Sequence record: MG655270.1
Strand: one strand, 5' to 3'
Length of the DNA: 64,000 nucleotides
The stretch's first letter is position 1, and each line of letters begins with the position of its first letter. The notes beneath the pieces are model-generated. The model had not been told where the DNA came from. It worked only from the letters and a program-made list of their open reading frames with translations, and ran no database searches. This document shows positions 5,406-62,780 of this stretch, piece by piece. The translations under genes and the position numbers were made by a program.

Positions 5406-5433
5406 AGGAGAGCTTCGGCTCTCCTTTATGCCG
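5406..5433 (+). terminator. hairpin plus TTATGCCG element
   Basis: AGGAGAGC-TTCG-GCTCTCCT then TTATGCCG. Confidence 0.75.
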
Positions 5434-5669
5434 GCCAGGTTTTCCACCCATTTCCTCTATCGGACAACAGATATAGATAGCGTCTGATCAACGTCATTGA
5501 TTACACCTTATTCTACAACCCCAACGTAACCTGTCGACATTCATAAGGGAATGCCACACCGTTGTTTATGTCCGTCCTTATAAAAGAAGCGACCAAGCAA
5601 AAGACCAATAATCCGCAAGCCTTCTTTAAACTAAACTTGTTCTCTTTTCTTATTAATCTGGAGTGTTGT

Positions 5670-6002
5670 ATGGATTTCTCATTTCTACTTGATCAAAACC
5701 CGTTGAGCTATTACAAAAACGAGTTACCGGCCTTAGTCCGTGAACTTAATCGCTCGATGGAAGATGATGCCCGTGTTTCCTGTGAAGACGCACTGAATGC
5801 GCTGGTGCATCTCTTTGCAACACCGGGTGAGCTCATCAGCCTTACTATTCAGCGCCACTGTAGCATCGCTGAGCAGAAGCTGCGTTATACGGCAAAGTTC
5901 ATCAATGACACGGTGGTCACGGTCGAAGGACCTGAACCAATGGATCTGCGCTATGTGCTAGGGACTGCAGTATTTAACGCCATTACCATTCCTATCAAAT
6001 AA
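5670..6002 (+). CDS. hypothetical protein (MDFSFLLDQ...)
   Basis: GGAG RBS before ATG5670; ends at a terminator. Confidence 0.65.
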   Translation: MDFSFLLDQNPLSYYKNELPALVRELNRSMEDDARVSCEDALNALVHLFATPGELISLTIQRHCSIAEQKLRYTAKFINDTVVTVEGPEPMDLRYVLGTAVFNAITIPIK

Positions 6003-6004
6003 AT

Positions 6005-6060
6005 CGGCATAAGAGGAGAGGCATTTGCCTCTCCTCTGTTATGTTACTTCTTTTTTTTTT
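6005..6060. terminator. bidirectional terminator between convergent genes
   Basis: CGGCATAA, 11-bp stem AGAGGAGAGGC/GCCTCTCCTCT, then T-rich tract. Confidence 0.85.
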
Positions 6061-6063
6061 GGT

Positions 6064-11330: not shown

Positions 11331-11363
11331 CCGGCATAATGAGGGGTCGTCACTGACCCCTCA
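11331..11363 (-). terminator. hairpin plus TTATGCCG element on the minus strand
   Basis: CCGGCATAA then TGAGGGGTC/GACCCCTCA. Confidence 0.65.
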
Positions 11364-11409
11364 AAAGTAATCCTATGTTTACACCACCTCTACGCCTAAG
11401 GAGAACCAC

Positions 11410-16087: not shown

Positions 16088-16140
16088 CAGCATAAAGACA
16101 GAGAGCTTCCTTGCGGAGGCCCTCTGTCTTGTTTATGCCG
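16088..16140. terminator. bidirectional hairpin element between convergent genes
   Basis: CAGCATAA-AGACAGAG...CTCTGTCT..TTATGCCG. Confidence 0.75.
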
Positions 16141-18161: not shown

Positions 18162-18246
18162 GCGCTCCGCCCTTAGTTTGAAAAATCAATCATATGTGCT
18201 CGTTACTTAAACATACCTAAGCTATAAAATTACTTTGGAGACCGAC

Positions 18247-20485: not shown

Positions 20486-20538
20486 GGGTGAGTGGGTGAT
20501 CCCCTCACCCACTTCCCTATGACCCAGGAGAGGTTTCG

Positions 20539-27529: not shown

Positions 27530-27568
27530 CAGCATAAGGAGAGGGCAAACGCCCTCTCCTCTATGCCG
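27530..27568. terminator. bidirectional hairpin element between convergent genes
   Basis: CAGCATA-AGGAGAGGGC-AAAC-GCCCTCTCCT-CTATGCCG. Confidence 0.8.
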
Positions 27569-35227: not shown

Positions 35228-35259
35228 GGGAGGGGCGCAGGTCTCTCCCTTTTATGCCG
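35228..35259 (+). terminator. hairpin plus TTATGCCG
   Basis: After the transglycosylase gene. Confidence 0.65.
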
Positions 35260-40378: not shown

Positions 40379-40388
40379 CTTACTTCTG

Positions 40389-40417
40389 GGGTGAGTGAAA
40401 ACTCACCCTTTATGCCG
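40389..40417 (+). terminator. hairpin plus TTATGCCG
   Basis: GGGTGAGT-GAAA-ACTCACCC. Confidence 0.75.
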
Positions 40418-46530: not shown

Positions 46531-46558
46531 AAGAGGACTTCGGTCCTCTTTTATGCCC
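46531..46558 (+). terminator. hairpin plus TTATGCCC
   Basis: AAGAGGAC-TTCG-GTCCTCTT. Confidence 0.75.
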
Positions 46559-47547: not shown

Positions 47548-47577
47548 GGAGAGGCGCATAGCCTCTCTCTTATGCCG
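47548..47577 (+). terminator. hairpin plus TTATGCCG
   Basis: GGAGAGGC-GCATA-GCCTCTCT. Confidence 0.7.
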
Positions 47578-49711: not shown

Positions 49712-50005
49712 ATGTCGTTCACACTGTCAAAGAAACTCGTTCCTGTTCTGCTCACCGCGAAAGACGGCCGTAAGTACGCCGTTGTTAATGGCGGTAACCG
49801 CGCCAAGCTGACCCTCGGCTTTGATGACGGGATCAGTCAGGAGGTTGCTGTGCCTTCTGAGCAGATTCCTGAAGAAGCGCGCACCAACGGCACCAAACTG
49901 TATTTCGATGCAGAAGGTGCGGTGACGGGCTGGGATGCAGCACCGGGTGGAAAGACGAAGTCAAGCACGACTGCCGGATCAATGACCATGCGTCGTCCTG
50001 GCTAA
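49712..50005 (+). CDS. hypothetical protein
   Basis: GAGG RBS; followed by a terminator. Confidence 0.7.
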   Translation: MSFTLSKKLVPVLLTAKDGRKYAVVNGGNRAKLTLGFDDGISQEVAVPSEQIPEEARTNGTKLYFDAEGAVTGWDAAPGGKTKSSTTAGSMTMRRPG

Positions 50006-50013
50006 ACCATCAG

Positions 50014-50039
50014 GGGGAGGGAAACCTCCCCTTATGCCG
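50014..50039 (+). terminator. hairpin plus TTATGCCG
   Basis: GGGGAGG-GAAA-CCTCCCC. Confidence 0.75.
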
Positions 50040-50051
50040 TATGGAGGGGTT

Positions 50052-50582
50052 ATGAGTTTATTGATCTACACTGACGGGCTGTTAATCGGTGATCGTCGGG
50101 GAACACGTAATGCAGAGCATGAGCGATTCATCCGTGACATGAAGAAGACCCATGTTTCGAAATGCAAACGCTTAGCGTTAGGGGTGGTAGGGGAAGAGAT
50201 TCATCCAACAGATCTGCCAAAGGTGATGACCTTCTTTATTAACTCGCTGACCGATCACTATCACCGTGAGCATGATGTGGGCTATGCCCACAGTTATAGC
50301 GAAGAAGAGTCATTGGTAGCTGGCCTTGAGAATCGTCGTTTTATCCTGATGACAGCTGACCGGGCGTTTATCATTAACTTCGGCTCTTTGACTGAGATCA
50401 CTCACGAGCCCTGGTATTGCTCAGGTAACGGAATGGCGATGGCCGATGTCTTTCTGACTGCAGGGATGTCGCCAGGGAAAGTAATTGAAGCGGTAGCCAA
50501 ACTCAATCTGGAAGTGGGGCATTCATTTACCCGTGTCGAACAGTCTCGCTTAAAACCCTTGATTAAGAAGGTGGAAGAATGA
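50052..50582 (+). CDS. Ntn-hydrolase / HslV-proteasome-beta-like protein
   Basis: M-S-LLIYTDGLLIGDRR N-terminus and CSGNG.A.A...AG.S...V..V pattern of phage Ntn peptidase-like proteins. Confidence 0.55.
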   Translation: MSLLIYTDGLLIGDRRGTRNAEHERFIRDMKKTHVSKCKRLALGVVGEEIHPTDLPKVMTFFINSLTDHYHREHDVGYAHSYSEEESLVAGLENRRFILMTADRAFIINFGSLTEITHEPWYCSGNGMAMADVFLTAGMSPGKVIEAVAKLNLEVGHSFTRVEQSRLKPLIKKVEE

Positions 50583-51097
50583 GTGGCATATTCGCAGCCC
50601 AAGGACGTAACCTGGTGTTTCCTACTCAACTGGAGAAAAGGAGTGGGCTTTACTACACCCCGCCTCCTGAAGCGTGCTGGATGCCCTGGGGGCGTTACTT
50701 CCCACTGTCAGCAACCAGCTTCAATATCCTCGAGCATTTCATGACCGGAGAAGATCTGCCACGGGAGAGTTCATACTCGACGCACGTGCTCGGTATTCTG
50801 GTCACACCAAACGGACTGATCTACGAATACATCAATACCGTTGAAGGGATTAGACGGCGGGTTGTTCCTTTGGGTAAAGGTGCAGTGTATTGTCGCTCCG
50901 ATGATCCATTGCTGGAAGAAGCTATGACAGCAGCGATGGTAGTCCATGACCAGCTGGTTGACGCCATTACACTGGTAGGGAAGTCCCGCAAACTGATGAC
51001 CCATCAGTACAAATATACAACACTGGACAAAGTATATGCGGAAATAAAGGAACGTAAAATTGTCCTGCAACCGCCCACGAGGAATAATCTAATTTAA
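50579..51097 (+). CDS. hypothetical protein, possible degenerate partner of the Ntn-like gene
   Basis: ATGA overlap; similar size and C-terminal helix pair. Confidence 0.6.
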   Translation: MSGIFAAQGRNLVFPTQLEKRSGLYYTPPPEACWMPWGRYFPLSATSFNILEHFMTGEDLPRESSYSTHVLGILVTPNGLIYEYINTVEGIRRRVVPLGKGAVYCRSDDPLLEEAMTAAMVVHDQLVDAITLVGKSRKLMTHQYKYTTLDKVYAEIKERKIVLQPPTRNNLI

Positions 51098-51122
51098 CCC
51101 CTGTTTATATAGAAAGGAAAAT

Positions 51123-51569
51123 ATGAACAACTTTATTAACGATGCTTTAGATATCATTGAACTTAACGAAAGTAGTGCACGTACTGAACTCTGCCGCAAG
51201 CAGGAAGCTTCGTTACCGGCCTATATTCTCAAACTGGCGACCCGACTGGCCAAGAAGATTGCCTATGCAGTTCGCTTAATGGAGAAACGCGATGAAGGGT
51301 ATGTTCGTCTTGGTACTTATAGCGATCGCTGGTTACTCTGTTTTGGTGACCGCATCAGCCGTTATGGCATGCATACGTCGGGTAAGCATGCGCTCTATCT
51401 TACCTTGGATTGGGCTACTTTTATCCGTGACCATAAGTTATTTGACGTGGCAAATCACCTACTTCAATTGGCTCTGGGCAAGTTGCTTCCTGGGCATTGT
51501 GTGTTACTGGGCGGTGAAACACCCAAACACGAATTCGAGTTCGTGATCTGCAAACAAACAATAAAATAA
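51123..51569 (+). CDS. hypothetical protein, paralog of 51581
   Basis: L.W..FI.D..L...LL...L..L.P...VLLG. Confidence 0.7.
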   Translation: MNNFINDALDIIELNESSARTELCRKQEASLPAYILKLATRLAKKIAYAVRLMEKRDEGYVRLGTYSDRWLLCFGDRISRYGMHTSGKHALYLTLDWATFIRDHKLFDVANHLLQLALGKLLPGHCVLLGGETPKHEFEFVICKQTIK

Positions 51570-51580
51570 GAGAGGGCGCC

Positions 51581-52000
51581 ATGCCACAGCGTGGTACAAC
51601 ACCGAGCTTTGCAGAATTCACACAGCAAGAACTGGCAGAGAAGGTAATCCCGATACTGCCAGATTACTGTAACCGTCTTTGTGGGGTCATGATCAGCACA
51701 TGCTTTGCGCATCGCGTGGGGCTTACTGACAAATCTGTACTGCGTTTTGCTGAGTATCACTTCAACCCCACACCCGACCTAGCGCGACAAACAGACTGGT
51801 CGGTGGAAGTGCGAAGTGAGCAGTGTGTGGTTTATGAACTCAACATCCCCAAGTTTGTCCATGAGGCTGGATTGGTAAAGCAGTTTTTAGATATCCTCTC
51901 CAGCCATCTTGAACTTTATTTCACTGACAGTAAGGTGCTCCTCGGTCATGTACTCCCGCCGTGCTTCCTTACTATCCGCATTGAGAAAACAACACCATGA
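51581..52000 (+). CDS. hypothetical protein, paralog of 51123
   Basis: LNIPKFVHEAGLVKQFLDILSSHLELYFTDSKVLLG. Confidence 0.7.
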   Translation: MPQRGTTPSFAEFTQQELAEKVIPILPDYCNRLCGVMISTCFAHRVGLTDKSVLRFAEYHFNPTPDLARQTDWSVEVRSEQCVVYELNIPKFVHEAGLVKQFLDILSSHLELYFTDSKVLLGHVLPPCFLTIRIEKTTP

Positions 52001-52764
52001 ATCTTTATCTCGTCTCTGACAGTCGTTATACCCCGCCAGGTGATTTCTACAACAACTGGTTAGTCCACGCTAATAGTCGTGACAATGCCGCGATGTTGTG
52101 TAATTCACGTTGTCTGGTTGATACCTTTGAGATCGGTAGCCTGAACTACAACAACGGCGAACTGATCATGATGCACAAGACCGTCCAGCACACGGATGAA
52201 CCGCGTCTGAAGCAGAAGGTTGGTGATGCACTGTATTATCCTTTAACGGTATCACCTGACAGCAGTGCCTTTGACCGTATCATTGGTGAGATCGTGAACA
52301 AAGCCGCCTCTCCGTTACCGGAAGGTGTCTCTGTCGATCGCCTTCTCATCAATGCTGACAGTCCTGAAGCGCTGTTCTTTATCTCGCGCCATGACTTTGG
52401 TAGTTCGCGTTGTTACTACAAAATCCCCAGTGAACTCGACAGCCAGATCTCTAAACTGCTGGACTTCAATAAAGGCGAGCGTATTCCCCGTACGTCCCAC
52501 GAACCGGTCGTGCTCTCCTGGCGTAGTCGACTGTCCCTCATGATCGCGCGTCAGCATGATGATGCGTACAACCATGAGAAGCTGGAGATCTACCGTAAAA
52601 TGGCATTTGATCTGGTAGCTGCTGCGACTGACCACGAGAACGCTGCACTCGCGATACTGGACCCGGACCAACCCGAATTCAAAGTCTGGATGCCCGGGAT
52701 TGATGAAGAGAAGATCCATCAAGCGCTGGATGCGTTTGGTGCACCACGTCAGTTAGGGGAATAG
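51997..52764 (+). CDS. hypothetical protein
   Basis: ATGA overlap. Confidence 0.7.
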   Translation: MNLYLVSDSRYTPPGDFYNNWLVHANSRDNAAMLCNSRCLVDTFEIGSLNYNNGELIMMHKTVQHTDEPRLKQKVGDALYYPLTVSPDSSAFDRIIGEIVNKAASPLPEGVSVDRLLINADSPEALFFISRHDFGSSRCYYKIPSELDSQISKLLDFNKGERIPRTSHEPVVLSWRSRLSLMIARQHDDAYNHEKLEIYRKMAFDLVAAATDHENAALAILDPDQPEFKVWMPGIDEEKIHQALDAFGAPRQLGE

Positions 52765-52781
52765 CCTATTAGGAGCTGTTT

Positions 52782-53372
52782 ATGGAGAGGATAACATTAG
52801 CTTGGCTAAGAGCTAATCAAGGAAGGAAATCTCTGGAAGATCGTTTGTTTCAATTCGGTCACGTTTATAGTGAGAGAGATTCCTGTTTCACCTGGCGTGG
52901 GATGGTGGATAATTACGGCTACGGAAAGATAAAGGTTAAAAGTAGATTGGTGGGTGCACACAAACTGTCTTATCTGCTATTCAAAGGGGATATTCCAGAA
53001 GGTATGGTAGTTAGACACACGTGCGATAACCCAGTCTGTATTAACCCCTCTCATTTAATCGCGGGTACGGTAAAGCAAAACGTTCATGATGCAATAGCAA
53101 AAGGCCGTGCTTCTTTTCAGAATGCTATCAATTCATCGGTATGTAAGTTTCTGCCGGCCAACGCTATTATTATGGTAGATAGAAAGATAGGCCCACTACT
53201 ATGTTATGCAACAACCCGGCGATTAGCCCTTGCTGATAATTCTAAAGTTTACTGGGGTCGTCCGTGTAAGTCACACGGCATGCCTTGGAGAAGAACCAGT
53301 AATGGCGAATGTGTCTATTGCAGGCACGAATACCGAGCAGGTGTGAAGTATACACCTAATGGAAAGAGGTGA
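52782..53372 (+). mobile_element. free-standing HNH homing endonuclease gene
   Basis: CFTWRG..YGYG..AHKLSY..VVRHTCDNPVCINPSHL..GT..QN HNH motif; C-terminal GRPCKSH..R..GECVYC; visibly more AT-rich than flanks. Confidence 0.9.
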
Positions 53373-53525
53373 TCCCTTTATCTTCCGCGGGTGAGGGTTA
53401 GAACCCGGCTGTGGCCGCATAGCCAAAGTCGGTTAATCAAAGTCGACGGATTTGGATTACCCGGCGTGACTTGTCATTGTTTCACTTTGTTCCACTACAC
53501 AAACAGCTCAACTCTCTCATAATTC

Positions 53526-53556
53526 AAGGGGTGGGGTAACTCACCCCTTTATGCCG
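53526..53556 (+). terminator. hairpin plus TTATGCCG
   Basis: AAGGGGTG...CACCCCTT. Confidence 0.7.
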
Positions 53557-53571
53557 CAAGGATCTATTATC

Positions 53572-53904
53572 ATGCAGGAATTCTTCAAAAGCTACGGCAC
53601 GTACTTCTTTGATGTACTCATGTTTATCATGGTGTTCGCCTGGTGTTTCTGTGGCAGTGGCGGTACACGTCATGACAAAAACAAATGGTTGCGTTACGGC
53701 GCACCTGTTGCACTTGGTCTTTTTGTTGTGCTGGTCGTCCACGGGTTTGGTGCATTTGATCGTTATCTGGAAAGGAATAAGTGCGCTGACTTACCAATAG
53801 GTGTCGGCGTAATGATTGAAGACCGCTGCTACAAGCGCGTTGATGGACCCGTGTACATATCCGCCGACAGTACCGTGTACAAGGAGAGCAATGTACATGA
53901 CTGA
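53572..53904 (+). CDS. small two-TM membrane protein
   Basis: Two hydrophobic helices; AAGGA RBS. Confidence 0.7.
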   Translation: MQEFFKSYGTYFFDVLMFIMVFAWCFCGSGGTRHDKNKWLRYGAPVALGLFVVLVVHGFGAFDRYLERNKCADLPIGVGVMIEDRCYKRVDGPVYISADSTVYKESNVHD

Positions 53905-54100
53905 TTTGTGGTTGTACATTGCAATCTTTCTGCTCTGTTATATCTGGGCATTCTTCGGTCTTCCACCTACCGGTAATAAAAGAAAGCTTTATCTGTATCC
54001 GGGAATCGTTGCAGTAGCGTTCTGTTTAGGTGTAATGGCGATTAAGAACTGCAGTGATTCAACCACACGATATCAACCGCTGTACAACGTGCATCAATAA
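53897..54100 (+). CDS. small two-TM membrane protein, likely paralog of 53572
   Basis: AAGGAG RBS; same topology. Confidence 0.65.
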   Translation: MTDLWLYIAIFLLCYIWAFFGLPPTGNKRKLYLYPGIVAVAFCLGVMAIKNCSDSTTRYQPLYNVHQ

Positions 54101-54103
54101 CGG

Positions 54104-54131
54104 GAGGAGGCTTTGGCCTCCTCTTATGCCG
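54104..54131 (+). terminator. hairpin plus TTATGCCG
   Basis: GAGGAGGC-TTTG-GCCTCCTC. Confidence 0.75.
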
Positions 54132-54201
54132 ACTATTCTTTTTTGGTTATTTCCTACATCTACCCGCAAATCATTTAGCCCATTATACACTGGAGTTATT
54201 C

Positions 54202-54756
54202 ATGGAAAAGATTACGAGTGATACGATCCTTGCTAAGTTACATGAGGTGGCAGAAACAAACAAAGAAAACCAACATCGGAAACTCCGCTCAATAAGCCAA
54301 ACCATGGCGTACAACATTGAAGCGATAGTCGAGTTGATTGCGTTATCGGGTGAGATGCACCTTGATCTGCTTGATCGACGCAAGGTTGATGAGATCATAG
54401 AGCCGCATTACAAAGGCAATCAACGGGCTTATAGTCGACTGAGTCATACCGCCTCTATTCACACGGGGATGGAGTACCTTGCCGGCAACGCGCACATCTA
54501 CACCAACAACGAGGGTAAAGAAGCGGTACGAATCGTCTGTACCTTTAAGTTTAAACGCGACTTCCTGCAACCTAGCTTATTACCTAAGGTACTTCACTAC
54601 TGTCTGCAGGAGCTTCAACCGCAGTTTGATGATGGCGGCAGTAGCGTCTTCTTCCACACACCGGGTGAGTTAGATAATCCCCGTCTTAAAGCCATTCCGG
54701 GCTGGCACGTCGACGCTAACGTCCGTGATAACTCCATTGTCATTAGTTTACGTTAA
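54202..54756 (+). CDS. hypothetical protein
   Basis: GGAG RBS. Confidence 0.7.
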   Translation: MEKITSDTILAKLHEVAETNKENQHRKLRSISQTMAYNIEAIVELIALSGEMHLDLLDRRKVDEIIEPHYKGNQRAYSRLSHTASIHTGMEYLAGNAHIYTNNEGKEAVRIVCTFKFKRDFLQPSLLPKVLHYCLQELQPQFDDGGSSVFFHTPGELDNPRLKAIPGWHVDANVRDNSIVISLR

Positions 54757-54766
54757 GGAACCAAAC

Positions 54767-55477
54767 ATGATCGTTGTTGTTGTTGATACTGAATCGACTG
54801 CTTTGGATGAGCTCGCGGGTATTCTGAGTTTGTCCGCTATTCGCACTAACGTGGCTGACATGAGTTGCATCAAGCACCTGATCGGCGTGCACCAAGCCGG
54901 CAAGACGCATGACGACATCTTCCATGCCGTATTGAACCTTAATGAACAATACGTGATGGGTCGTACCTTCTTGCAAAGCACCCAGGATTGGTGGATGAAG
55001 AAAACCACCCCGGCGGCGAAGGCTTCAGTAACCGGACCAACACAGTCTGCAAAAGATGCTTTGACAGCATTTGTGGTTTTCATCGAAAAGGCCATTGAGG
55101 CGACGATTAACGAACGCGGGGAGAAAGCGAAGGTCCAGCTGTACTACCGTGGCGACTTCGATGCTAAAGCCATTGCGTCCCTGGCAAAAGCGGTGGGTGT
55201 TGAACTCCCGTATATTTTCAATCAGAACAAAGAGATCCGCACATATATCGATGCCAAGCTGGACACGGATATCGGTTATATCCCGTGGCTCGGTTACCCA
55301 GAAGGACTGGGGCGTCATAGCTCACTCGATGATGTTCTAATCGATGGCTTCGAGATGGCGGTGGCCTATCGCATCAATCACCTCGAAAAGTTCGATAAAA
55401 AGTCGGTGCCGGGCGAGATCGCCAAACTGAAAGAAACGTACCCTGTTCCGGAGAAAACCCATGCAAAATCTAAATGA
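54767..55477 (+). CDS. DEDD-family 3'-5' exonuclease (ExoVIII / Rv2179c-like)
   Basis: VVDTES (ExoI), RGDFD (ExoII), HSSLDD (ExoIII) motifs. Confidence 0.8.
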   Translation: MIVVVVDTESTALDELAGILSLSAIRTNVADMSCIKHLIGVHQAGKTHDDIFHAVLNLNEQYVMGRTFLQSTQDWWMKKTTPAAKASVTGPTQSAKDALTAFVVFIEKAIEATINERGEKAKVQLYYRGDFDAKAIASLAKAVGVELPYIFNQNKEIRTYIDAKLDTDIGYIPWLGYPEGLGRHSSLDDVLIDGFEMAVAYRINHLEKFDKKSVPGEIAKLKETYPVPEKTHAKSK

Positions 55478-56183
55478 CCGTATCTTTGCCAATTATGATG
55501 GTTACATTGAAGCTATTGATGCGCATTTTAAACCTACCTATCAACTGCAGCTGGCTGAGCAAGTCATCCCGGGTGAGCAGATGGATAAGCTTGTAACCTG
55601 GATGGACCACAACGCCCATGTCAAAGGTGCGACGGTCTACCTGATGGAGTTGGTGCCTGATCTCGATAAACCGCATCCTGCACAATCAGAGATGCGTGTG
55701 TTTATTGCACTCGGTATGTTTAATCGTGAAGTCAACCCTGATTTGCCTTACTGGTGTCATGTACATCGCCATTACCCGGTTAACCTCGCTGTCGACTTGA
55801 TTGTTACTGACCTGCAAGGCGTTCCTGTAACCCATGCCGTTCTGACTGCGTTTAAGTCATTTGATCGAGCGCGTACCTACAGGGATAATCTCGGCGGCAA
55901 AGGTGGGCATCAACCGCATCACGAAATCCATACTGGCATTATTGACCAAAGTGGTAAGGTGATCTTCGAAGCCTACGGGAATATCAACTGGCATACCAAG
56001 AATGCCATTCGCCTGCTGGCTGAACGACAGATTTTGCAGGAAGATACCGAGTTGTCAGCGGTGTGGTTACTGGCGGGTTTAAAAGCGGGTGTTAACTGGA
56101 AAGTCGAAGACCATGTTGACATCATGAAAGCAATCGATACTTTCCGTCCGAGGAATACCCATGATTTTAACGGCTATGTTTAA
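55461..56183 (+). CDS. hypothetical protein
   Basis: 240 aa, overlaps neighbours. Confidence 0.7.
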   Translation: MQNLNDRIFANYDGYIEAIDAHFKPTYQLQLAEQVIPGEQMDKLVTWMDHNAHVKGATVYLMELVPDLDKPHPAQSEMRVFIALGMFNREVNPDLPYWCHVHRHYPVNLAVDLIVTDLQGVPVTHAVLTAFKSFDRARTYRDNLGGKGGHQPHHEIHTGIIDQSGKVIFEAYGNINWHTKNAIRLLAERQILQEDTELSAVWLLAGLKAGVNWKVEDHVDIMKAIDTFRPRNTHDFNGYV

Positions 56184-56925
56184 GAAGTGCTTTGGTGCGT
56201 CGTCTGTCTATAAAGAAGATGACGGCAGTACACGCATTACCGCTGACCAGTATGAACTTACGCTGGGTCGATCCTACCATCCTAAGCTCAAGCGTAAGGT
56301 GGGTCGGGGATTTGGCTTCTATGTCGAAAATGGCGAGAAGCTCGAGTTCGTCTTGCGGGGTTACTGGTTTGTGTTGATCGCCTGGAGCAAGAAGCGCAAA
56401 TCACTCAATTGGGACGAAGCGGAAAATGCACCGACCTACGGCTTCAATGTTGTCGACTCTGACTTAGCGATCTATCTCGGCAATGAATCCGCTAAGTCAG
56501 ACAAACACATCAGCATGCGTAGTCGTAGCAAATACATCCCCCTGCCCTGGGCCTGGACCTTCCATAAGCGTGAAGTGTTAACCACCCGTGATACCTGGGT
56601 TGATGTCAAAGAAGGTGCGTTATCTCAGGAGTGGTCGTTCCCCGCCACATACGTCACCAAGCACAATGAAGTGCAAGAGATGATGATCGAAGCGAAGATG
56701 GAGCGCATGACCTGGCGCCTGGCATGGCTCCCTTGGTTCGCACCGGTTACCAAGAAAGACCGCTCGGCGAGTTACAAGTACCACGGGAACGGTGGTAACG
56801 GGGTTGGTCACGATGCCAGTGGGTGGAAAGGCGGGGTCATCGGTGGCGGGGTCATCATGCGAGACAATGAACACAACCCGAAAGAAACATTCGACCGTTT
56901 AATTAAAGAGCAGCATTACGGCTAA
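56161..56925 (+). CDS. hypothetical protein, aromatic-rich
   Basis: 254 aa, operon packing. Confidence 0.7.
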   Translation: MILTAMFKKCFGASSVYKEDDGSTRITADQYELTLGRSYHPKLKRKVGRGFGFYVENGEKLEFVLRGYWFVLIAWSKKRKSLNWDEAENAPTYGFNVVDSDLAIYLGNESAKSDKHISMRSRSKYIPLPWAWTFHKREVLTTRDTWVDVKEGALSQEWSFPATYVTKHNEVQEMMIEAKMERMTWRLAWLPWFAPVTKKDRSASYKYHGNGGNGVGHDASGWKGGVIGGGVIMRDNEHNPKETFDRLIKEQHYG

Positions 56926-56937
56926 GAAGGAAAACAC

Positions 56938-58089
56938 ATGCGTCAGTATTTGGATGGGATTCGTTACATCTTTGAGAACGGGTCACAACGAGGGGATCGC
57001 ACCGGGGTAGGTACGTTGTCGGTGTTCTCGATGAAGCAGACTTACGATCTGCGTCTGGGATTCCCACTGGTCACCAGTAAGAAAGTGCGTATCGATTTTA
57101 TTATCGAAGAGCTCATCTCCTTCCTGTCGGGTAATCCCGATATGCCGGGTGTGGGTATCTGGGATGATTGGCGTGTTAAAGACGAAGTCTCTCGTGAAGT
57201 CCCGTTAGAGAACCACGAGCGTTTAAAACTCTGGGTTGAGAAGTCGGACCTGAAGTATAACGTTGCTTACCTTCAACTCAATGCGATGGGTTCTGTCGAA
57301 GCGGGTCATCGTTTCCTGGATGAGCAAGGGATTCCACGTAACAGAAAAGAAGTACTGGTAGCAGAAGGTGCACTCAATGCACCCTATGGGCCAGCGTGGC
57401 GTGCGTGGAAAGGTCGTCAGGGCGAAGTGCATGATCAGATCGGTTATCTGCTCAAGCTGCTTAAAAACAATCCTACGAGCCGTCGTATGCTATTGTCTGC
57501 TTGGGACCCGGCGAACATGCCGGATGAGTCTATCAGCCCGCAGGATAACATCATTGATGGCAAGCCACCTCTGACTCCGTGTCATTGGGCGTTTGAGCTG
57601 TACACTGACGAAATCCTGGCAGAGGAACGCCTTGATTGGGTCGAAGCTAACGCACCTAGCCTCTGGGAAGACTACAATGATCGTTCAGGACGTGGTCAAT
57701 GGTTAGGCGACACAGACAGTAAGCGCCTTCATGAATTCCTGGACGAAGCCGGCGTACCGAAGTATTACCTGGATATGAAGTATCACCAACGTTCCTGTGA
57801 CTATATGGTTGGCGTGCCGTATAACATCGCCAGCTATGCGGTGTTGCAGCACATGTTCGCCGCCACCTGTAACATGATCCCGCGGATACTGGAAGCGGAT
57901 ATGACTAACATCCATATCTACAACTTCCACAAAACCAATGCGGTCATGCAGGCCAGTCGCAGCCCACGCGCACTACCCACTCTGAAGGTACTCGCCGCTC
58001 ACGATAAGTTGGAAGACTATACGTTGGAAGACTTTGAACTCGAAGGTTATGATCCGCATCCTTTTATTAAATATGAAAGAGCGGTCTGA
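56938..58089 (+). CDS. thyA: thymidylate synthase ThyA with two insertions
   Basis: DRTGVGT, PLVTSKK, SRR.LLSAW, TPCH catalytic Cys, YHQRSCD..GVPYNIASY, HIY. Confidence 0.96.
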   Translation: MRQYLDGIRYIFENGSQRGDRTGVGTLSVFSMKQTYDLRLGFPLVTSKKVRIDFIIEELISFLSGNPDMPGVGIWDDWRVKDEVSREVPLENHERLKLWVEKSDLKYNVAYLQLNAMGSVEAGHRFLDEQGIPRNRKEVLVAEGALNAPYGPAWRAWKGRQGEVHDQIGYLLKLLKNNPTSRRMLLSAWDPANMPDESISPQDNIIDGKPPLTPCHWAFELYTDEILAEERLDWVEANAPSLWEDYNDRSGRGQWLGDTDSKRLHEFLDEAGVPKYYLDMKYHQRSCDYMVGVPYNIASYAVLQHMFAATCNMIPRILEADMTNIHIYNFHKTNAVMQASRSPRALPTLKVLAAHDKLEDYTLEDFELEGYDPHPFIKYERAV

Positions 58090-58121
58090 TCCATTGGTGC
58101 GTTGAAGGGAGCACAACGGTA

Positions 58122-58487
58122 ATGAAGAGAGAGTCCAGTTACACCCTGGTCTTTGGGGAAGGTAGTACTGAAGAAGATGTCAATACCCTGCGTGAGATGG
58201 TGTCACACATGCGGGGGTTGACCGGGTTGTCGCAGCTGGGGGCGTTTGAGGTGTTCGTTACCCATTATGAATTGCAACGTAAAGACGCAGGGCTGATCAT
58301 CAGTGATCTTCCAGTGAATGCACAGTCGTTGTTTGATGTCAGTGATCGACAGAACTGGCTGACACCGCTGTTCACTTCCCGGGGGTTAGTGGCGTGTGAC
58401 TTGTTGTTGCTGTTGAAGCAAGGCAAATGGGCCGGAGAACACCTCAAGGTGACCTTTCGGGTAAAGGGTATCAGGGCGAAAGCATAA
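58122..58487 (+). CDS. hypothetical protein
   Basis: ORF between thyA and a terminator. Confidence 0.6.
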   Translation: MKRESSYTLVFGEGSTEEDVNTLREMVSHMRGLTGLSQLGAFEVFVTHYELQRKDAGLIISDLPVNAQSLFDVSDRQNWLTPLFTSRGLVACDLLLLLKQGKWAGEHLKVTFRVKGIRAKA

Positions 58488-58493
58488 CGCATA

Positions 58494-58521
58494 CGGAGGG
58501 GTCATTCCCTCCGCTATGCCG
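58494..58521 (+). terminator. hairpin plus CTATGCCG
   Basis: CGGAGGG-GTCATT-CCCTCCG. Confidence 0.7.
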
Positions 58522-58562
58522 ATTAAGTTTTTAACAAAGTTTACTGCAGATCTTTTCAGACC

Positions 58563-58570
58563 TATATCAC
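58563..58570 (+). promoter_or_regulatory. candidate early promoter TATATCAC
   Basis: CAGACCTATATCACG, near-identical to the 40015-40029 site. Confidence 0.5.
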
Positions 58571-58619
58571 GTCGGTGAATAACCTTTCACTAATTAACCA
58601 ATCCGTAAGGAGTTTTATC

Positions 58620-59996
58620 ATGGCTGCATTAAAATCTAAAGTTGAACTGTTTCACTGGTATCAGGAACTGAAAACTGAATTTAAAACCGGCAAGATTACC
58701 GTGTTCGAATTTGAGCGGCAAGTGCTCAGCGAAATTCTTTCCCTGACCGATACTGGTAAAACACCATCTACTGCCAAAATCAGTCTGGTAGTGGACATCC
58801 TTAATTCTGTGGTTTTTGATCATGTGTTTACCGCAGACGGTATCATTGACCTGGACAACATGCTCGCTCGTGAACACGTACGCAACATTTCGGAATTGAC
58901 GGCAGCACGCAATAACTTTATTACCATACAAGCCCAGGCCCGTCTGAACAAAGAAAAGGAACAGACTGCGAAACCAGCAGAGCAGAAGGCGTTTGCCAAG
59001 TTTCCAACGAAAGAAGAGCTCGAATATTGGGTTAATGCCAGAAAGCTATTCCGTTATGGTAACCCCAATACGCTCGGCACTGAAGCATACCAGGAGGTTG
59101 TCAAATACTGGCATCTGGTCGATAAATATCTGGGTACATTAAAACTGGAACTGGATCACACCGACCCTAACTACGTCGATAACATCCTGTTGATTGACTA
59201 CTTTGTATCGTTGGTCGCCAAGCAAGAGGTTCCTGAGGAAGAACGCAGGCATCTGAAAGACACACTTAGCAGTCTATATGCGTGCCCCATTAAAACCCCA
59301 CACATCGATGCATTTGTCGAACGTGACCAACACCCCCTTCCAGTTAAGCCAAAACAACCACCCATCGCGCAACAAGCCATCGACCGCGCTATTGCCTGGC
59401 GTGAAGAGGAAACCAAAACAAACCATCAGCAAAAAGACATATTACGAGAATTCGCCGATCAATACTGTCCGGTAATGGTGGCCAAGCAACATGCCACTCA
59501 GCAGTTGTTTGATTTCGTTGCTCGTGCGGTGAAACGTGTCTTGACCGCCATTGCTCAGCCAAACAACCCGGAAGACGCCGAGATGCTGGCAAAAGGTCAT
59601 GCCATCAACATTCTCAATGTTAAGCATGGTGTAATTGGTGTCAGTACCACGATTACCAGAAACGGTCTGGTCAAGTTACGCATCTTCGCTGAACGTGAAC
59701 TATGTAACGAGGACTACGGTATTCCGACTCTGTCGTATAATCAAGTCCGTCAATCACCTCATGCAACGTTCAGCATACCAATGCCGGCACTGATAGATGG
59801 GTTCATTAACATGTGGGATATCCCTAATCAGGCCCCTCGCCATATGCATAATAGCGTAGGCGGTATGTTGGGTAATCCCTATCCGTTACAGCAGCTTGAT
59901 GGTTTGATGTCAGCTATTGCAAGAGAAACAGCCGAGTACGGCGTTACGCCTACTTATGGCATGATCGAAGACAGCATGATTGTTGTGCTGCATTAA
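58620..59996 (+). CDS. modular hypothetical protein with duplicated helical domain shared with 60060
   Basis: AAGGAG RBS; WYQELK..F.TG.I and LIDYFVSLVAKQEVPEE motifs. Confidence 0.75.
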   Translation: MAALKSKVELFHWYQELKTEFKTGKITVFEFERQVLSEILSLTDTGKTPSTAKISLVVDILNSVVFDHVFTADGIIDLDNMLAREHVRNISELTAARNNFITIQAQARLNKEKEQTAKPAEQKAFAKFPTKEELEYWVNARKLFRYGNPNTLGTEAYQEVVKYWHLVDKYLGTLKLELDHTDPNYVDNILLIDYFVSLVAKQEVPEEERRHLKDTLSSLYACPIKTPHIDAFVERDQHPLPVKPKQPPIAQQAIDRAIAWREEETKTNHQQKDILREFADQYCPVMVAKQHATQQLFDFVARAVKRVLTAIAQPNNPEDAEMLAKGHAINILNVKHGVIGVSTTITRNGLVKLRIFAERELCNEDYGIPTLSYNQVRQSPHATFSIPMPALIDGFINMWDIPNQAPRHMHNSVGGMLGNPYPLQQLDGLMSAIARETAEYGVTPTYGMIEDSMIVVLH

Positions 59997-60002
59997 TTCA
60001 CA

Positions 60003-60034
60003 CGGGGAGGTTTCCCTCCCCCTTTTATTTTTTA
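60003..60034 (+). terminator. intrinsic terminator
   Basis: GGGGAGG-TTTC-CCTCCCC followed by a long T tract. Confidence 0.75.
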
Positions 60035-60059
60035 ATTAACCTACTGTGAGAATTTAACC

Positions 60060-60761
60060 ATGAACAAAGAAACTTATACTACCTGGTACAATGGATTAAA
60101 AGAAAGATTGGCGACTGGGCACATTAATCAAGAACACTACGAGACACTTATTGTTGACAATCTAAGTTCATTGATTACTCATTTCTTCAATAGTCGATAC
60201 GACGATGGTCATATGTCTCTGGAGGAGCATTTTGCGTTAGTTAATCATTATTTCGAACTGGTTGCTGATGCAGAAATATCAGAACGCAGTGCCATGCTCA
60301 TGGTACGTTCTGTAGCTAGCAGTATTCAAAAGCTACCAGCGGCTAAAGCCTTCGCAGAGAAACATAACACTCCGGCGCCGTCAATTAAAGAAATTCTTGG
60401 TAGTCGACCTGGTTTACTGCGTAAGCATGCTGCCAGCACGACCGAGAAGATGATAGGGTGTCCGGTGATCACCCAGGCCAACGAACCTGAGAACGAAGTA
60501 ACCATTGACTTACCCTGGAAATTGGCATTGCACGTTTACAAAGGGTTCCTGGTAAAGGCGCTGATGTCAAAGCACGGATATAAATACAGTGATGCGTATA
60601 ACTACATTACTGATCATCAGAACAAATACGACGAACTCTTGGCAGAAGTCCTCAACAACATTATTGCTAATGAGGAATCGCATCTGGTGTCGGTAGGTGG
60701 CGGCATCACTGCAGCGGGTACTGGTCTGGTGGTAAGCGGGATTATTAAGCCGGAGGAGTGA
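60060..60761 (+). CDS. helical domain fused to an RNA polymerase beta-prime-like fragment
   Basis: aa ~108-205 align in register with the beta-prime segment GKQGRFRQ...GRSVIT...LPKKMALELFKPF...ILDEVI. Confidence 0.7.
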   Translation: MNKETYTTWYNGLKERLATGHINQEHYETLIVDNLSSLITHFFNSRYDDGHMSLEEHFALVNHYFELVADAEISERSAMLMVRSVASSIQKLPAAKAFAEKHNTPAPSIKEILGSRPGLLRKHAASTTEKMIGCPVITQANEPENEVTIDLPWKLALHVYKGFLVKALMSKHGYKYSDAYNYITDHQNKYDELLAEVLNNIIANEESHLVSVGGGITAAGTGLVVSGIIKPEE

Positions 60762-61321
60762 TGAAAGGAGAGATAGAGACACGCTTCAGAAGACACTACG
60801 GCAACCACATTAAACGGGGTAGTGATATCGCAGTGCCTTTATACCACATTAGTCTACAGAATGACTTGGAGGGGCTATGGCGACCTAAAGCCCCTGACTC
60901 GCCATTTGATATTCCGAAGAAACCCAACATCATTACTGAAATGCCGCTCCCGCGTATCTGTGTAGCACCATCTATCGAACAGTGCTTCTGGGCAATCTAT
61001 CCCAATATCTCTAAGCTCTTTGAAGAGGAAGAATACGCAGCGGTTTGTTTTGCGGTTTATCAACCGATTCTGCATGCCGGTATTGCTGTCGTGGATACCA
61101 GTACGTTAACGCAATGCCGACTAGTGCACGATGCACATATTACCGGCGAGCATTGGTTACTTAGTGATACCACCATGTGTGTGATCGACTTTATTCAGGT
61201 TAATAACACCTCACACGGCGAGTTCGTAAAGTTCCATCCGTTTAATACCCCGGTTGGTAACGAATGGGAGCTCGCCCCTAAAAATGTTGTTTATCATTCA
61301 CTTAAATTAACGGAGTTGTAA
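60758..61321 (+). CDS. hypothetical protein, possible ADP-ribosyltransferase-like fold
   Basis: LYHIS / PRICVAPS / TGEHW motif spacing. Confidence 0.45.
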   Translation: MMKGEIETRFRRHYGNHIKRGSDIAVPLYHISLQNDLEGLWRPKAPDSPFDIPKKPNIITEMPLPRICVAPSIEQCFWAIYPNISKLFEEEEYAAVCFAVYQPILHAGIAVVDTSTLTQCRLVHDAHITGEHWLLSDTTMCVIDFIQVNNTSHGEFVKFHPFNTPVGNEWELAPKNVVYHSLKLTEL

Positions 61322-61325
61322 ATCC

Positions 61326-61970
61326 ATGGTAACTGCTAGAAAAGCTAATAAGACCTTAGGTGAGCACGCAGTGGCTCATGAGGCAGTAACACGCTTAGGT
61401 AGCAACAAGAAAGTCAAACCAGTTAAACCGCTTTGGACACTGGAGAACATCGAGGACAATCTGGTTGGTCAAGGCATCCTTGCCTACTTGAAACGCCACA
61501 CGTCGTTATCGATCCGTGATATCAACACCGCGGCTAACCGCCTGACGAAGATTGCTGATTCAGATATAAAGGAAGGGAAAGCGCGTGATTACGTGGCACG
61601 AGTTATTGGGTACAACAATTACGACGCTCTCAACGTCACCGTTCGTGCAGCGGTACCTGTGCGCAATCATGTACAACGTCGTAAAGCAAATCAGCCGGTC
61701 ACAGAGTTGTTGATAGAAGACGAAGAACTGCCGCCGGTAACACGTACTGAAATCAACCCCTTGGTGATGTTAGCCCTACAGCGTGAGATCTCTAAACGCG
61801 GCTTTCGTCTACTGGGTAAGAACTACCGGGCTTTCGTTAACAAGGATAACCCCGAGCACACCTTTACGTTGATGCAGGCGTATAACTACCTTGCCAAACA
61901 ACTGGGTTATCCGGATTATCACTCTATGCCCCGTCAATACCCAATCATTAACTTGCGCTACGTCGATTAA
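61326..61970 (+). CDS. protein with two 'glyoxalase superfamily'-type small helical repeats
   Basis: ARDYVARVIGYNNYDAL and AYNYLAKQLGYPDYHSM. Confidence 0.55.
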   Translation: MVTARKANKTLGEHAVAHEAVTRLGSNKKVKPVKPLWTLENIEDNLVGQGILAYLKRHTSLSIRDINTAANRLTKIADSDIKEGKARDYVARVIGYNNYDALNVTVRAAVPVRNHVQRRKANQPVTELLIEDEELPPVTRTEINPLVMLALQREISKRGFRLLGKNYRAFVNKDNPEHTFTLMQAYNYLAKQLGYPDYHSMPRQYPIINLRYVD

Positions 61971-61992
61971 CCTATTGTAAGGAATAAAGAAC

Positions 61993-62742
61993 ATGACAAC
62001 GACTTTCCCGAAAGAGATGAATGCTGCTTTCCATCCTGATAACGAACAAACCACCCAGCTGTGCAAAACGATCCAGCAGATCAGCGGGGTGGAGATCAAA
62101 CGTGTACATGTGGTGATGGCGATCCACCATTACAAACAAAACGATGCGGCACATCAGCCTGACCACATGCTGGCGGTCTTAGCAGAAGCAGCCCACATCA
62201 TCCAGTCGTTTCCTGACCTGGAGAAATGGCGCACCCAGATCATGTTAGGGTGTCTGTTCCATGACACCCACTGTCACATCGATCGGGATATGCACCACCT
62301 GCTAGGCGCCGAACATGCCCAAGAGGCATTACTGGAGTATGCGTGTGGTTATGGGATGTCACGTGCGGATGTCTACCTGATCAGTCAGGCCGTACTGGAG
62401 CATCGGGCTTCCTGGAAGTACCCGCGTATTAACCCTGTATCCAACGCTGTGGCGTCTGCAGATCGTGGCTACCCTGATCTAAAGAAATACATCCGTCGTG
62501 CTGTACAGTACCGTTACAAGCGCATGGCAGTCATCAACATGAACACCATCATCGATGAGTCGATCGAACACATGGTAGAGAAGTTCGGTGATGGCGGTTA
62601 TGCCTGGGAAAGCTACCCGACGTATGCAGCGGTGATGCACGGTGATGCGATTCAACAAGTGAAGCAACAACTGCGCAGTAAAGAAGGAAAGGCACAGCTC
62701 AAGGAGTACGCTGAACTCCACTTTGATGAGTGGGTAGAATAA
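61993..62742 (+). CDS. HD-domain phosphohydrolase
   Basis: HQPDH, LFHDTH, HHLLGA, EH, ASADR motifs. Confidence 0.88.
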   Translation: MTTTFPKEMNAAFHPDNEQTTQLCKTIQQISGVEIKRVHVVMAIHHYKQNDAAHQPDHMLAVLAEAAHIIQSFPDLEKWRTQIMLGCLFHDTHCHIDRDMHHLLGAEHAQEALLEYACGYGMSRADVYLISQAVLEHRASWKYPRINPVSNAVASADRGYPDLKKYIRRAVQYRYKRMAVINMNTIIDESIEHMVEKFGDGGYAWESYPTYAAVMHGDAIQQVKQQLRSKEGKAQLKEYAELHFDEWVE

Positions 62743-62750
62743 GCTACGTG

Positions 62751-62780
62751 GCCGGAGGATTACCTCCGGCTGTTATGCCT
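62751..62780 (+). terminator. hairpin plus TTATGCC
   Basis: GCCGGAGG-ATTA-CCTCCGGC. Confidence 0.7.

What the first reader, a model, noticed from the sequence alone, without database searches (positions are those of the whole stretch)
5406..62780. Fourteen GC-rich hairpins each followed by a conserved (T/C)TATGCC(G) tail instead of a long U-tract
Seen at 5406, 6005(-), 11331(-), 16088 (both strands), 27530 (both strands), 35228, 40389, 46531, 47548, 50014, 53526, 54104, 58494 and 62751. Stem sequences vary but the 3' tail is fixed. At the convergent junctions 16088 and 27530 the motif is on both strands, so it tracks transcript 3' ends rather than gene starts. Knowledge: phiKZ nvRNAP late promoters have a TATG core at the start site. 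Inference: either a phage-RNAP-specific termination or 3'-processing signal, or a fused terminator/re-initiation element.
Basis: partly seen in the sequence, partly recalled or inferred. Interest (0 to 1): 0.7.

Follow-up and report, generated by a model that had tools for sequence, protein, structure and literature searches.

The report
Jumbo-phage terminators with a fixed tail
These are the transcription stop signals of a giant Erwinia phage: a hairpin followed by a fixed short sequence instead of a run of U's. The same kind of signal has already been mapped by experiment in its Pseudomonas relative phiKZ, so the finding is real but belongs to a known kind.

Summary
The window is bases 1-64000 of Erwinia phage vB_EamM_Mortimer, a phiKZ-like jumbo phage with its own split RNA polymerases and a nuclear-shell homologue.

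All 14 listed loci exist. Each is a stable GC-rich hairpin followed within 0-3 nt by the tail. This is not chance: 13 hairpin-preceded TATGCC in the window against 1.2 in shuffles.

Genome-wide, 71 intergenic hairpins carry the tail. 42 of the 44 full tails lie just downstream of a same-strand gene. 16 of 18 convergent junctions have the element, usually on both strands. None of 17 divergent junctions has it. In relatives the stems change by compensatory pairs or are replaced outright, while the tail stays.

The element matches the conserved terminator motif published for phiKZ and 201phi2-1. I re-mapped the public phiKZ end coordinates. Transcripts end inside or just after the tail at 29 of 33 such terminators. 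None of the 33 has a transcript start at the tail.

Verdict: phiKZ-type intrinsic terminators, newly described for the genus Agricanvirus. The "fused re-initiation" reading is not supported. Why the tail contains the four bases that also mark the phage polymerase's late start sites remains open.

The parts
5406..5433 (+). Terminator after gp4: hairpin 5406-5425, tail to 5433
   Evidence: Fold dG -13.7, z -3.6. Context. Stem and tail are kept in Ea35-70 and AH06, with one stem change.
6005..6037 (-). Terminator after gp6 (portal) at the convergent gp5/gp6 junction
   Evidence: dG -21.1, z -5.7. AH06 shows two compensatory stem pairs with the tail unchanged.
6012..6058 (+). Plus-strand face of the same hairpin, after gp5: variant tail (TATGTT) followed by a T-run
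11332..11363 (-). Hairpin with a minus-strand tail between the plus-strand genes gp7 and gp8. It is one of only two full tails not placed after a same-strand gene, and may be an antisense backstop.
   Evidence: dG -17.3, z -4.9. Listed as an exception. The tail is not kept in AH06.
16095..16140 (+). Bidirectional terminator at the convergent gp13/gp14 junction, plus-strand face
   Evidence: dG -23.8, z -5.5. Junction census.
16088..16130 (-). The same hairpin, minus-strand face (tail reads TATGCT)
   Evidence: dG -24.1, z -5.2.
27537..27568 (+). Bidirectional terminator at the convergent gp20/gp21 junction, plus-strand face. It is part of a 38-nt cassette (27531-27568) found three times in the genome.
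   Evidence: dG -19.9, z -4.9. Cassette copies. Ea35-70 and AH06 have a different stem here but the same tail.
27530..27561 (-). The same hairpin, minus-strand face (tail reads TATGCT)
   Evidence: dG -21.8, z -6.5.
35228..35259 (+). Terminator after gp29
   Evidence: dG -16.7, z -3.5. Kept in relatives.
40388..40417 (+). Terminator after gp40
   Evidence: dG -15.2, z -5.2. Kept in relatives.
46531..46558 (+). Terminator after gp50 (tail TATGCCC)
   Evidence: dG -11.3, z -3.5. AH06 has a different stem, and its tail has A in place of the G.
47548..47577 (+). Terminator after gp51
   Evidence: dG -14.0, z -3.3. AH06 has a different stem but the same tail.
50012..50039 (+). Terminator after gp56. 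A second copy of the four-base word follows at 50040.
   Evidence: dG -17.5, z -3.2. Second copy.
53526..53556 (+). Terminator after the gp62 region
   Evidence: dG -17.3, z -3.5.
54104..54131 (+). Terminator after gp64
   Evidence: dG -16.5, z -4.4.
58494..58521 (+). Terminator after gp70
   Evidence: dG -14.1, z -2.7.
62748..62780 (+). Terminator after gp75 (tail TATGCCT)
   Evidence: dG -18.1, z -4.0.
63976..64000 (+). Terminator after gp77. The window end cuts its tail, which continues in the genome record.
20486..20524 (+). Hairpin after gp18 with a variant tail (TATGACC). It may be a terminator, or a late start site for gp19.
1001..2689 (+). Context only: gp2, homologue of phiKZ GP123. 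GP123 is the polymerase subunit whose lobe pocket binds the four-base start-site word.
   Evidence: tblastn gives 26% identity, E = 4e-48. Pocket residues compared.

Best explanation
These are the intrinsic (factor-independent) transcription terminators of a phiKZ-like jumbo phage.

Proposed mechanism:
1. The GC-rich, mostly tetraloop hairpin forms in the nascent RNA.
2. The fixed tail is the last stretch transcribed. By homology with phiKZ, the RNA ends inside or just after it, about 7-9 nt past the stem.
3. The tail therefore takes the place of the usual U-tract. Its first bases (T-rich, then A-T) give a partly weak hybrid.
4. The conserved C-C/T-G that follows sits at and just beyond the release point. 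I infer that it acts as a pause or release signal.

At convergent gene pairs one hairpin carries a tail on each strand and stops transcription from both sides. The phage genome is transcribed by phage polymerases, so these are the enzymes the signal acts on in vivo.

What is shown and what is inferred:
- Shown here: structure, placement, orientation and conservation.
- Taken from published maps of relatives: that RNAs end there.
- Inferred: the role of each tail base.
For: Structure: all 16 window copies fold as one hairpin with a free tail.

Specificity: 37% of strong intergenic hairpins carry the tail, against 3.9% in coding sequence. The 7-mer TATGCCG occurs 63 times, 43 of them after a hairpin, and the remainder is at chance level.

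Placement:
- 42 of 44 full tails follow a same-strand gene.
- Convergent junctions 16/18, divergent junctions 0/17, p = 4e-8.

RNA-level signal: the sense strand folds better than the antisense strand in 26 of 32 one-sided loci (Wilcoxon p = 5.6e-5), and 50 of 71 loops are tetraloops.

Evolution: stems covary or are swapped while the tail is kept.

Relatives: the tail is enriched 4-10 fold over background in AH06, phiKZ, KEN51, 201phi2-1, Goslar, RisingSun, EL and Xoo-sp14.

Literature: phiKZ terminators share a stem-loop followed by a TTAT region. The main 201phi2-1 motif resembles it, and strong 201phi2-1 terminators stop transcription in a reporter.

My re-mapping of public phiKZ coordinates: 33 of 64 mapped 3' ends sit at such an element, and 29 of those 33 lie +2 to +6 from the first T of the four-base word.
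Against: - There are no transcript maps for Mortimer or any Agricanvirus. The function is transferred from relatives whose polymerase subunits are only about 26-33% identical.
- The G/C-rich half of the tail should strengthen the RNA-DNA hybrid, not weaken it, so the classical U-tract mechanism does not explain why it is conserved.
- Mapped 3' ends cannot by themselves separate termination from trimming.
- Two full tails (11332-11363 minus strand, and genome position 121666 plus strand) point against the local genes.
- About a dozen other intergenic hairpins have plain T-rich tails, so the tail is not obligatory.
Confidence: 0.85

Rival explanations
1. Fused terminator and promoter. The same four bases in the tail would also serve as the start site for the phage non-virion polymerase, which would stop at the hairpin and re-start at the tail's G.
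For: - The tail contains the four-base word that marks phiKZ late start sites.
- Window gp2 is the homologue of the subunit that binds that word, and most pocket residues are kept.
- Distances from the tail to the next start codon (16-132 nt) would allow a leader.
- In phiKZ two terminators are followed within 5-10 nt by a second copy of the word that is a mapped start.
Against: - In phiKZ 0 of 33 tailed terminators has a same-strand start within 8 nt of the tail's G. Starts lie 9-58 nt downstream at separate promoters.
- The model late promoter p119L has no hairpin.
- In Mortimer the tail is as well kept at convergent junctions, where no gene follows, and is absent from all 17 divergent junctions.
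- Candidate late start sites upstream of structural genes are hairpin-less and are followed by T, A or G, never by the C seen in 83% of tails.
- A separate promoter-like motif follows several tails.
Confidence: 0.06
2. The hairpins are RNA 3'-end protection or processing sites. Transcripts would read through, and exonucleases would then trim them back to the structure.
For: Mapped 3' ends alone cannot tell termination from trimming. Stable GNRA and UUCG-type tetraloop hairpins are good exonuclease blocks.
Against: - phiKZ 3' ends lie 7-9 nt past the stem, inside the tail, not at the stem base.
- A protection site would not need a fixed sequence beyond the stem, yet the tail is the most conserved part.
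- Eight strong 201phi2-1 terminators lowered downstream expression in a two-reporter assay.
Confidence: 0.05
3. A DNA-level element. The palindromes would be protein-binding, recombination or mobile cassettes rather than RNA signals.
For: An identical 38-nt cassette occurs three times with unrelated flanks. At one junction relatives carry a different cassette. The phage encodes SbcCD-like nucleases.
Against: - Strong orientation bias relative to transcription: 42 of 44.
- G-U pairs make the sense strand fold better than the antisense strand. A double-stranded DNA site would not show this.
- The repeated unit ends exactly at the two tails, which fits copying of a working terminator.
Confidence: 0.03

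Closest known systems
Conserved intrinsic terminator motif of Pseudomonas phage phiKZ (Putzeys et al. 2024, microLife; PMC10914365)
   Same: - A GC-rich stem-loop directly followed by T-T-A-T, then G/T, two pyrimidines and G.
- Located at gene 3' ends.
- Bidirectional copies between convergent genes.
- Found in a phage with the same split multisubunit polymerases.
- The same element turns up in my own scan of phiKZ DNA.
   Different: - Mortimer strongly prefers C, C, G after the four-base word (83%, 69%, 68%). phiKZ mixes T and C.
- In Mortimer's one-sided sites the 5' arm is purine-rich (mean 0.79). The published phiKZ motif has a pyrimidine-rich 5' arm.
- No transcript ends have been mapped in Mortimer.
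Terminator motif A of Pseudomonas phage 201phi2-1 (PMC11512511)
   Same: The authors describe it as strongly resembling the phiKZ motif. It has 59 copies, and the phage has 15 bidirectional terminators. My scan finds hairpin-plus-tail elements there too.
   Different: The tail there is more variable (A or T before the word, T/C after it). Eight strong terminators were tested in a reporter in the uninfected host, which has not been done for Mortimer.
Classical bacterial intrinsic (Rho-independent) terminator
   Same: A GC-rich hairpin in the nascent RNA. The predicted release point is 7-9 nt after the stem, and one hairpin can act in both directions.
   Different: There is no U-tract. A standard scan (at least 5 T in 8) flags none of the nine tailed hairpins in 44-64 kb and is not enriched overall (20 found, 19.2 expected). 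Only 2-3 T's follow the stem, then a fixed A-T-G-C-C-G.
phiKZ non-virion RNA polymerase late promoter (four-base core at -3 to +1)
   Same: The same four bases occur in the tail. [quoted passage not shown]
   Different: - The promoter needs no hairpin (p119L).
- Mapped phiKZ starts do not coincide with terminator tails.
- Mortimer's candidate late sites differ from tails at the next base.

Membership tests
phiKZ-type conserved intrinsic terminator | GC-rich stem-loop in the transcript | tested here: met
   All 16 copies fold as a single hairpin, dG -11.3 to -24.1, z -2.7 to -6.5.
phiKZ-type conserved intrinsic terminator | T-T-A-T directly 3' of the stem | tested here: met
   The gap between the stem and the word is -1 to +3 nt in 58 of 71 sites. 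The base before the word is T in 80%.
phiKZ-type conserved intrinsic terminator | G/T, then two pyrimidines, then G after T-T-A-T | tested here: met
   Column shares over 71 sites: C 83%; C 69% or T 24%; G 68%. Hairpin-less copies of the word show flat composition at these positions.
phiKZ-type conserved intrinsic terminator | Lies downstream of genes in the sense orientation | tested here: met
   42 of 44 full tails and 62 of 71 tails overall. 0 of 17 divergent junctions.
phiKZ-type conserved intrinsic terminator | Bidirectional copies between convergent genes | tested here: met
   16 of 18 convergent junctions by strict detection. 8 carry the tail on both strands by that count, and at least 13 when the stem is allowed to absorb the first T.
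phiKZ-type conserved intrinsic terminator | Host genome is a phiKZ-like phage with its own multisubunit polymerases | tested here: met
   Split polymerase genes are annotated. Homologues were found of the non-virion beta subunit, of GP123 and of the nuclear shell protein.
phiKZ-type conserved intrinsic terminator | Transcript 3' ends map at the element | not testable with these tools
   No transcript data exist for Mortimer. In phiKZ, 29 of 33 mapped ends lie +2 to +6 from the start of the word.
Classical intrinsic terminator | Run of U (T) directly after the stem | tested here: not met
   None of the nine tailed hairpins in 44001-64000 passes the test of at least 5 T in 8. Only the separate hairpin at 60004 does.
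phiKZ late promoter (non-virion polymerase) | Four-base core at the start site | tested here: met
   The word is present in every tail by definition, so this carries no weight by itself.
phiKZ late promoter (non-virion polymerase) | Stands upstream of genes independently of a terminator, including in divergent promoter regions | tested here: not met
   0 of 17 divergent junctions carry the element. The tail without a hairpin is at chance level.
phiKZ late promoter (non-virion polymerase) | Primary 5' ends map at the G | not testable with these tools
   No data for Mortimer. In phiKZ, 0 of 33 tailed terminators has a start within 8 nt.
Rfam RNA families | Match to any curated family at its gathering score | tested here: not met
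   0 matches in the window.

The most novel reading that the evidence does not exclude
The tail may work because the phage polymerase's own start-site reader also acts during elongation. It would capture the four-base word in the non-template strand. This would produce a sequence-specific pause that lets the hairpin release the RNA without a U-tract. One protein pocket would then read both the start signal and the stop signal. The next base (C in tails, not C at starts) and the hairpin would decide which outcome follows.

Observations that fit but do not prove this:
- Lineages without the tail (Seoulvirus, Wellingtonvirus) have lost the two pocket lysines and changed one tyrosine.
- The word is depleted genome-wide, most strongly on the antisense strand.
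Probability: 0.15. Interest if true: 0.8.

Novelty: new member of a known kind. Interest (0 to 1): 0.4.

Why it matters
- Annotation. The element gives Erwinia jumbo phages (the RAY/Ea35-70 group, used as models for nucleus-forming phages and as fire-blight biocontrol candidates) a usable terminator map. It marks about 60 transcription-unit ends that standard terminator finders miss. It also exposes at least three gene starts that were probably annotated inside a terminator.
- Distribution. The phiKZ terminator tail is a clade-level signal shared by several genera on different hosts, and it is missing from others. That points to co-evolution with the phage polymerases.
- Open question. It sharpens a question in jumbo-phage transcription: how can a four-base word specify starts when the same word sits at most stops?

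Tried and rejected
- Hexamer enrichment alone: not significant. The signal lies in the link to a hairpin.
- Rfam: no family matches.
- Standard scan for sigma-70 promoters and U-tract terminators: no enrichment, and the tailed hairpins are not flagged.
- Tail ATG as a real start codon (annotated for gp51, gp57 and gp63): rejected. In AH06 the ATG is not kept at the gp50/51 site and the orthologue starts later. Starts with a ribosome-binding site lie 16-19 nt downstream for gp57 and gp63.
- Tail as a stand-alone promoter: rejected.
- Supplements of the two PMC transcriptome papers: not held. The preprint's supplement was held and was used instead.
- The genus paper on Agrican357virus ran motif searches but did not follow them up.
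- Pocket-residue comparison across eight phages: suggestive only. The alignments are at 20-26% identity, and tail loss is confounded with phylogenetic distance.
- One literature search failed on term length.
- My greedy ORF caller produced some false minus-strand ORFs, so the junction statistics use the deposited annotation instead.
Full report
IDENTITY OF THE WINDOW
The window is 100% identical to bases 1-64000 of Erwinia phage vB_EamM_Mortimer (MG655270.1; genus Agricanvirus; 273,914 bp). I read the deposited annotation and the rest of the genome as six stretches. The phage is phiKZ-like:
- It carries several split RNA polymerase beta and beta-prime genes.
- Window gene gp2 (1001-2689) is the homologue of phiKZ GP123 (26% identity, E = 4e-48).
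- gp227 is a homologue of the annotated nuclear shell protein of a Phikzvirus (E = 2e-18).

THE OBSERVATION
All 14 loci are real.
- As RNA, each of the 16 strand-specific copies folds into one hairpin with the tail unpaired (dG -11.3 to -24.1; z -2.7 to -6.5).
- The hexamer alone is not enriched (33 found, 28.3 expected).
- However, 13 copies follow a hairpin, against 1.23 (maximum 4) in 100 dinucleotide shuffles.
- At 16088 and 27530 the second strand reads TATGCT.

GENOME-WIDE CENSUS
I listed every stem-loop of dG <= -10 on both strands.
- 71 of 191 intergenic hairpins carry the four-base word within -3 to +7 nt of the stem. In coding sequence it is 19 of 486, the chance level (p = 3e-27).
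- Column shares over the 71 sites: T 80% just before the word. After it: C 83%, then C 69% or T 24%, then G 68%, then a T-rich stretch (45-63%) at +8 to +17.
- Copies of the word without a hairpin have flat composition at those positions.
- TATGCCG occurs 63 times, 43 of them after a hairpin. The other 20 match chance.
- Loops are mostly tetraloops (50 of 71).

PLACEMENT
I used the deposited gene strands.
- 42 of 44 full tails (TATGC, then C or T, then G) lie directly downstream of a gene on the same strand.
- 16 of 18 convergent junctions carry the element, many on both strands.
- None of 17 divergent junctions does (Fisher p = 4e-8).
- The two exceptions are 11332-11363 (minus strand) and genome position 121666 (plus strand). 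Each lies downstream of a convergent terminator, on the strand antisense to a structural-gene block. They could be backstops for read-through. This is inference.

RNA LEVEL OR DNA LEVEL
At one-sided loci the sense strand folds better than the antisense strand in 26 of 32 cases (Wilcoxon p = 5.6e-5), because G-U pairs exist only in the sense RNA. Together with the orientation bias, this argues for an RNA signal.

EVOLUTION
I compared nine window sites with Ea35-70 and AH06.
- The stem at 6012 shows two compensatory pair changes.
- The stems at 27537, 46531 and 47548 are replaced by unrelated hairpins.
- The tail is kept at eight of the nine sites. The exception is the odd minus-strand site at 11340.
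- At 46531 the AH06 tail has A in place of the G.

A wider scan of 30-50 kb from 13 other phages gave the share of strong hairpins that carry the tail, against background:

| Phage | Share with tail | Background |
|---|---|---|
| AH06 | 0.23 | 0.034 |
| phiKZ | 0.39 | 0.049 |
| KEN51 | 0.29 | 0.051 |
| 201phi2-1 | 0.23 | 0.034 |
| Goslar | 0.20 | 0.035 |
| RisingSun | 0.12 | 0.024 |
| EL | 0.12 | 0.028 |
| Xoo-sp14 | 0.11 | 0.012 |

There is no enrichment in Vibrio USC-1, Wellington, PCH45, the Seoulvirus SPLA1a or AR9.

WHAT IS KNOWN
- The phiKZ full-length transcriptome paper reports that 61 terminators share a stem-loop followed by a TTAT region. It gives a degenerate motif whose end matches the Mortimer tail, and it reports six bidirectional terminators between convergent genes.
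- The 201phi2-1 paper reports a main motif (59 copies) that resembles it. Eight strong terminators worked in a two-reporter assay in the uninfected host.
- The phiKZ late promoter is a four-base core at -3 to +1. It is read in the non-template strand by a pocket under the GP123 lobe.
- None of the passages I read comments on the overlap between that core and the terminator tail.
- The genus paper for these Erwinia phages ran motif searches but did not pursue them.

TEST IN THE MODEL RELATIVE
The preprint's supplement lists the phiKZ start and end coordinates. I placed them on phiKZ DNA from 19001 to 160000.
- Of 64 mapped 3' ends, 33 sit at a hairpin-plus-tail element.
- In 29 of those 33 the end lies +2 to +6 from the first T of the word. 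That is inside or just after the tail, 7-9 nt past the stem.
- None of the 33 has a same-strand start within 8 nt of the tail's G.
- Ten have a separate early, middle or late start 9-58 nt downstream.
- In two cases a second copy of the word directly after the tail is the mapped start.
- The reference late promoter p119L has no hairpin, and the major capsid gene is followed by a tailed hairpin.

MORTIMER'S OWN PROMOTER CANDIDATES
- Upstream of structural genes (gp8, gp16, gp17, gp149, gp184, gp185, gp293, gp298, gp324 and others) there are hairpin-less copies of the word, followed by T, A or G and never C.
- A second motif, an AT-rich stretch ending in CCTACATT, is exclusively intergenic: 15 of 15 plus-strand copies. 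It sits 30-70 nt before start codons, often 20-30 nt after a tail.
- This second motif resembles the core of the phiKZ early promoters listed in the supplement.
- Terminator and promoter therefore look like separate modules here as well.

MECHANISM
Shown: hairpin, fixed tail, 3'-end placement, orientation and conservation.
Taken from relatives: RNAs end in the tail, and such elements reduce downstream expression.
Inferred:
- The T-T-A-T part supplies the weak upstream half of the final hybrid.
- The conserved pyrimidine-then-G sits at the release point. From my own knowledge, as a lead only: bacterial polymerases pause preferentially with a pyrimidine at the RNA end and G as the incoming base.

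Why the G/C-rich half is conserved is not explained by the classical model. The most novel reading still open is that the GP123-type pocket also catches the word during elongation. The pocket comparison gives:
- F151, K158, K190 and H331 are identical in gp2.
- H185 becomes Y, Y406 becomes F and Y399 becomes H.
- The two lysines are lost in the tail-less Seoulvirus and Wellingtonvirus lineages.

This is compatible with that reading, but it is weak. Identity is low, and tail loss is confounded with phylogenetic distance.

VERDICT
The feature is real and highly non-random. It is a terminator of the phiKZ type, new for this genus but of a known kind.

Noticed in passing
window 32719-32728 and 40019-40028 (13 further plus-strand copies elsewhere in the genome): There is a second intergenic motif: an AT-rich stretch ending in CCTACATT. 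All 15 plus-strand genome copies of the 8-mer are intergenic. They sit 30-70 nt before start codons, often 20-30 nt after a tailed terminator. The motif resembles the core of the phiKZ early promoters listed in the preprint supplement, so these are candidate virion-polymerase early promoters.
   Followed up: partly
window 46553, 50034, 53551 (annotated starts of gp51, gp57, gp63): These three deposited gene starts use the ATG inside the terminator tail. In AH06 the tail at the first site has no ATG and the orthologue starts later. For gp57 and gp63, in-frame starts with a ribosome-binding site lie at 50052 and 53572. These are probably annotation artefacts.
   Followed up: partly
window 27531-27568; genome about 156857-156894 and 254480-254517: An identical 38-nt bidirectional terminator cassette occurs at three convergent junctions with unrelated flanks. 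The identity stops exactly at the two tails. Ea35-70 and AH06 carry a different stem at the first junction, so whole cassettes appear to be exchanged or copied.
   Followed up: partly
whole genome (L001-L006): The four-base word TATG is under-represented against a second-order expectation. On the sense strand the observed/expected ratio is 0.80. On the antisense strand it is 0.56, the second most depleted of all 256 tetramers. This could reflect selection against stray polymerase signals, but codon-phase effects were not excluded.
   Followed up: partly
window 24038-24055, 39958-39975, 41654-41681, 60004-60021: A smaller class of intergenic GC-rich hairpins has plain T-rich tails, several of them beginning T-T-T-A-T. 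These look like classical terminators. Only 60004 is flagged by the standard scan.
   Followed up: no
window 1001-2689 (gp2): gp2 is the homologue of phiKZ GP123, the subunit whose lobe pocket reads the late start-site word. Four of seven pocket residues are identical and three are conservative or changed. The deposited product name is only 'putative RNA polymerase beta subunit'.
   Followed up: partly
window 11374-11377 and 18191-18196: Hairpin-less copies of the word lie upstream of structural genes. One is 11 nt after the gp7/gp8 hairpin and is perfectly kept in Ea35-70 and AH06. The other is a palindromic six-mer in the divergent gp16/gp17 region that could serve both directions. These are candidate late start sites.
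   Followed up: partly
window 6048-6058 and many plus-strand faces of convergent terminators genome-wide: A run of 8-10 T begins 3-8 nt after the tail on the plus strand at many convergent junctions (for example genome positions 97654, 112036, 145774, 173608). It is too far from the stem to act as a classical U-tract. Its role is unknown.
   Followed up: no
window 44001-64000: Sigma-70-type promoter matches are not enriched (24 found, 26.5 expected). This fits transcription that does not depend on the host polymerase.
   Followed up: no
window 50040-50043: A second copy of the four-base word follows the gp56 terminator tail after 3 nt, just before the ribosome-binding site of gp57. In phiKZ the same arrangement occurs twice with the second copy mapped as a start (near positions 94330 and 145659).
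   Followed up: partly
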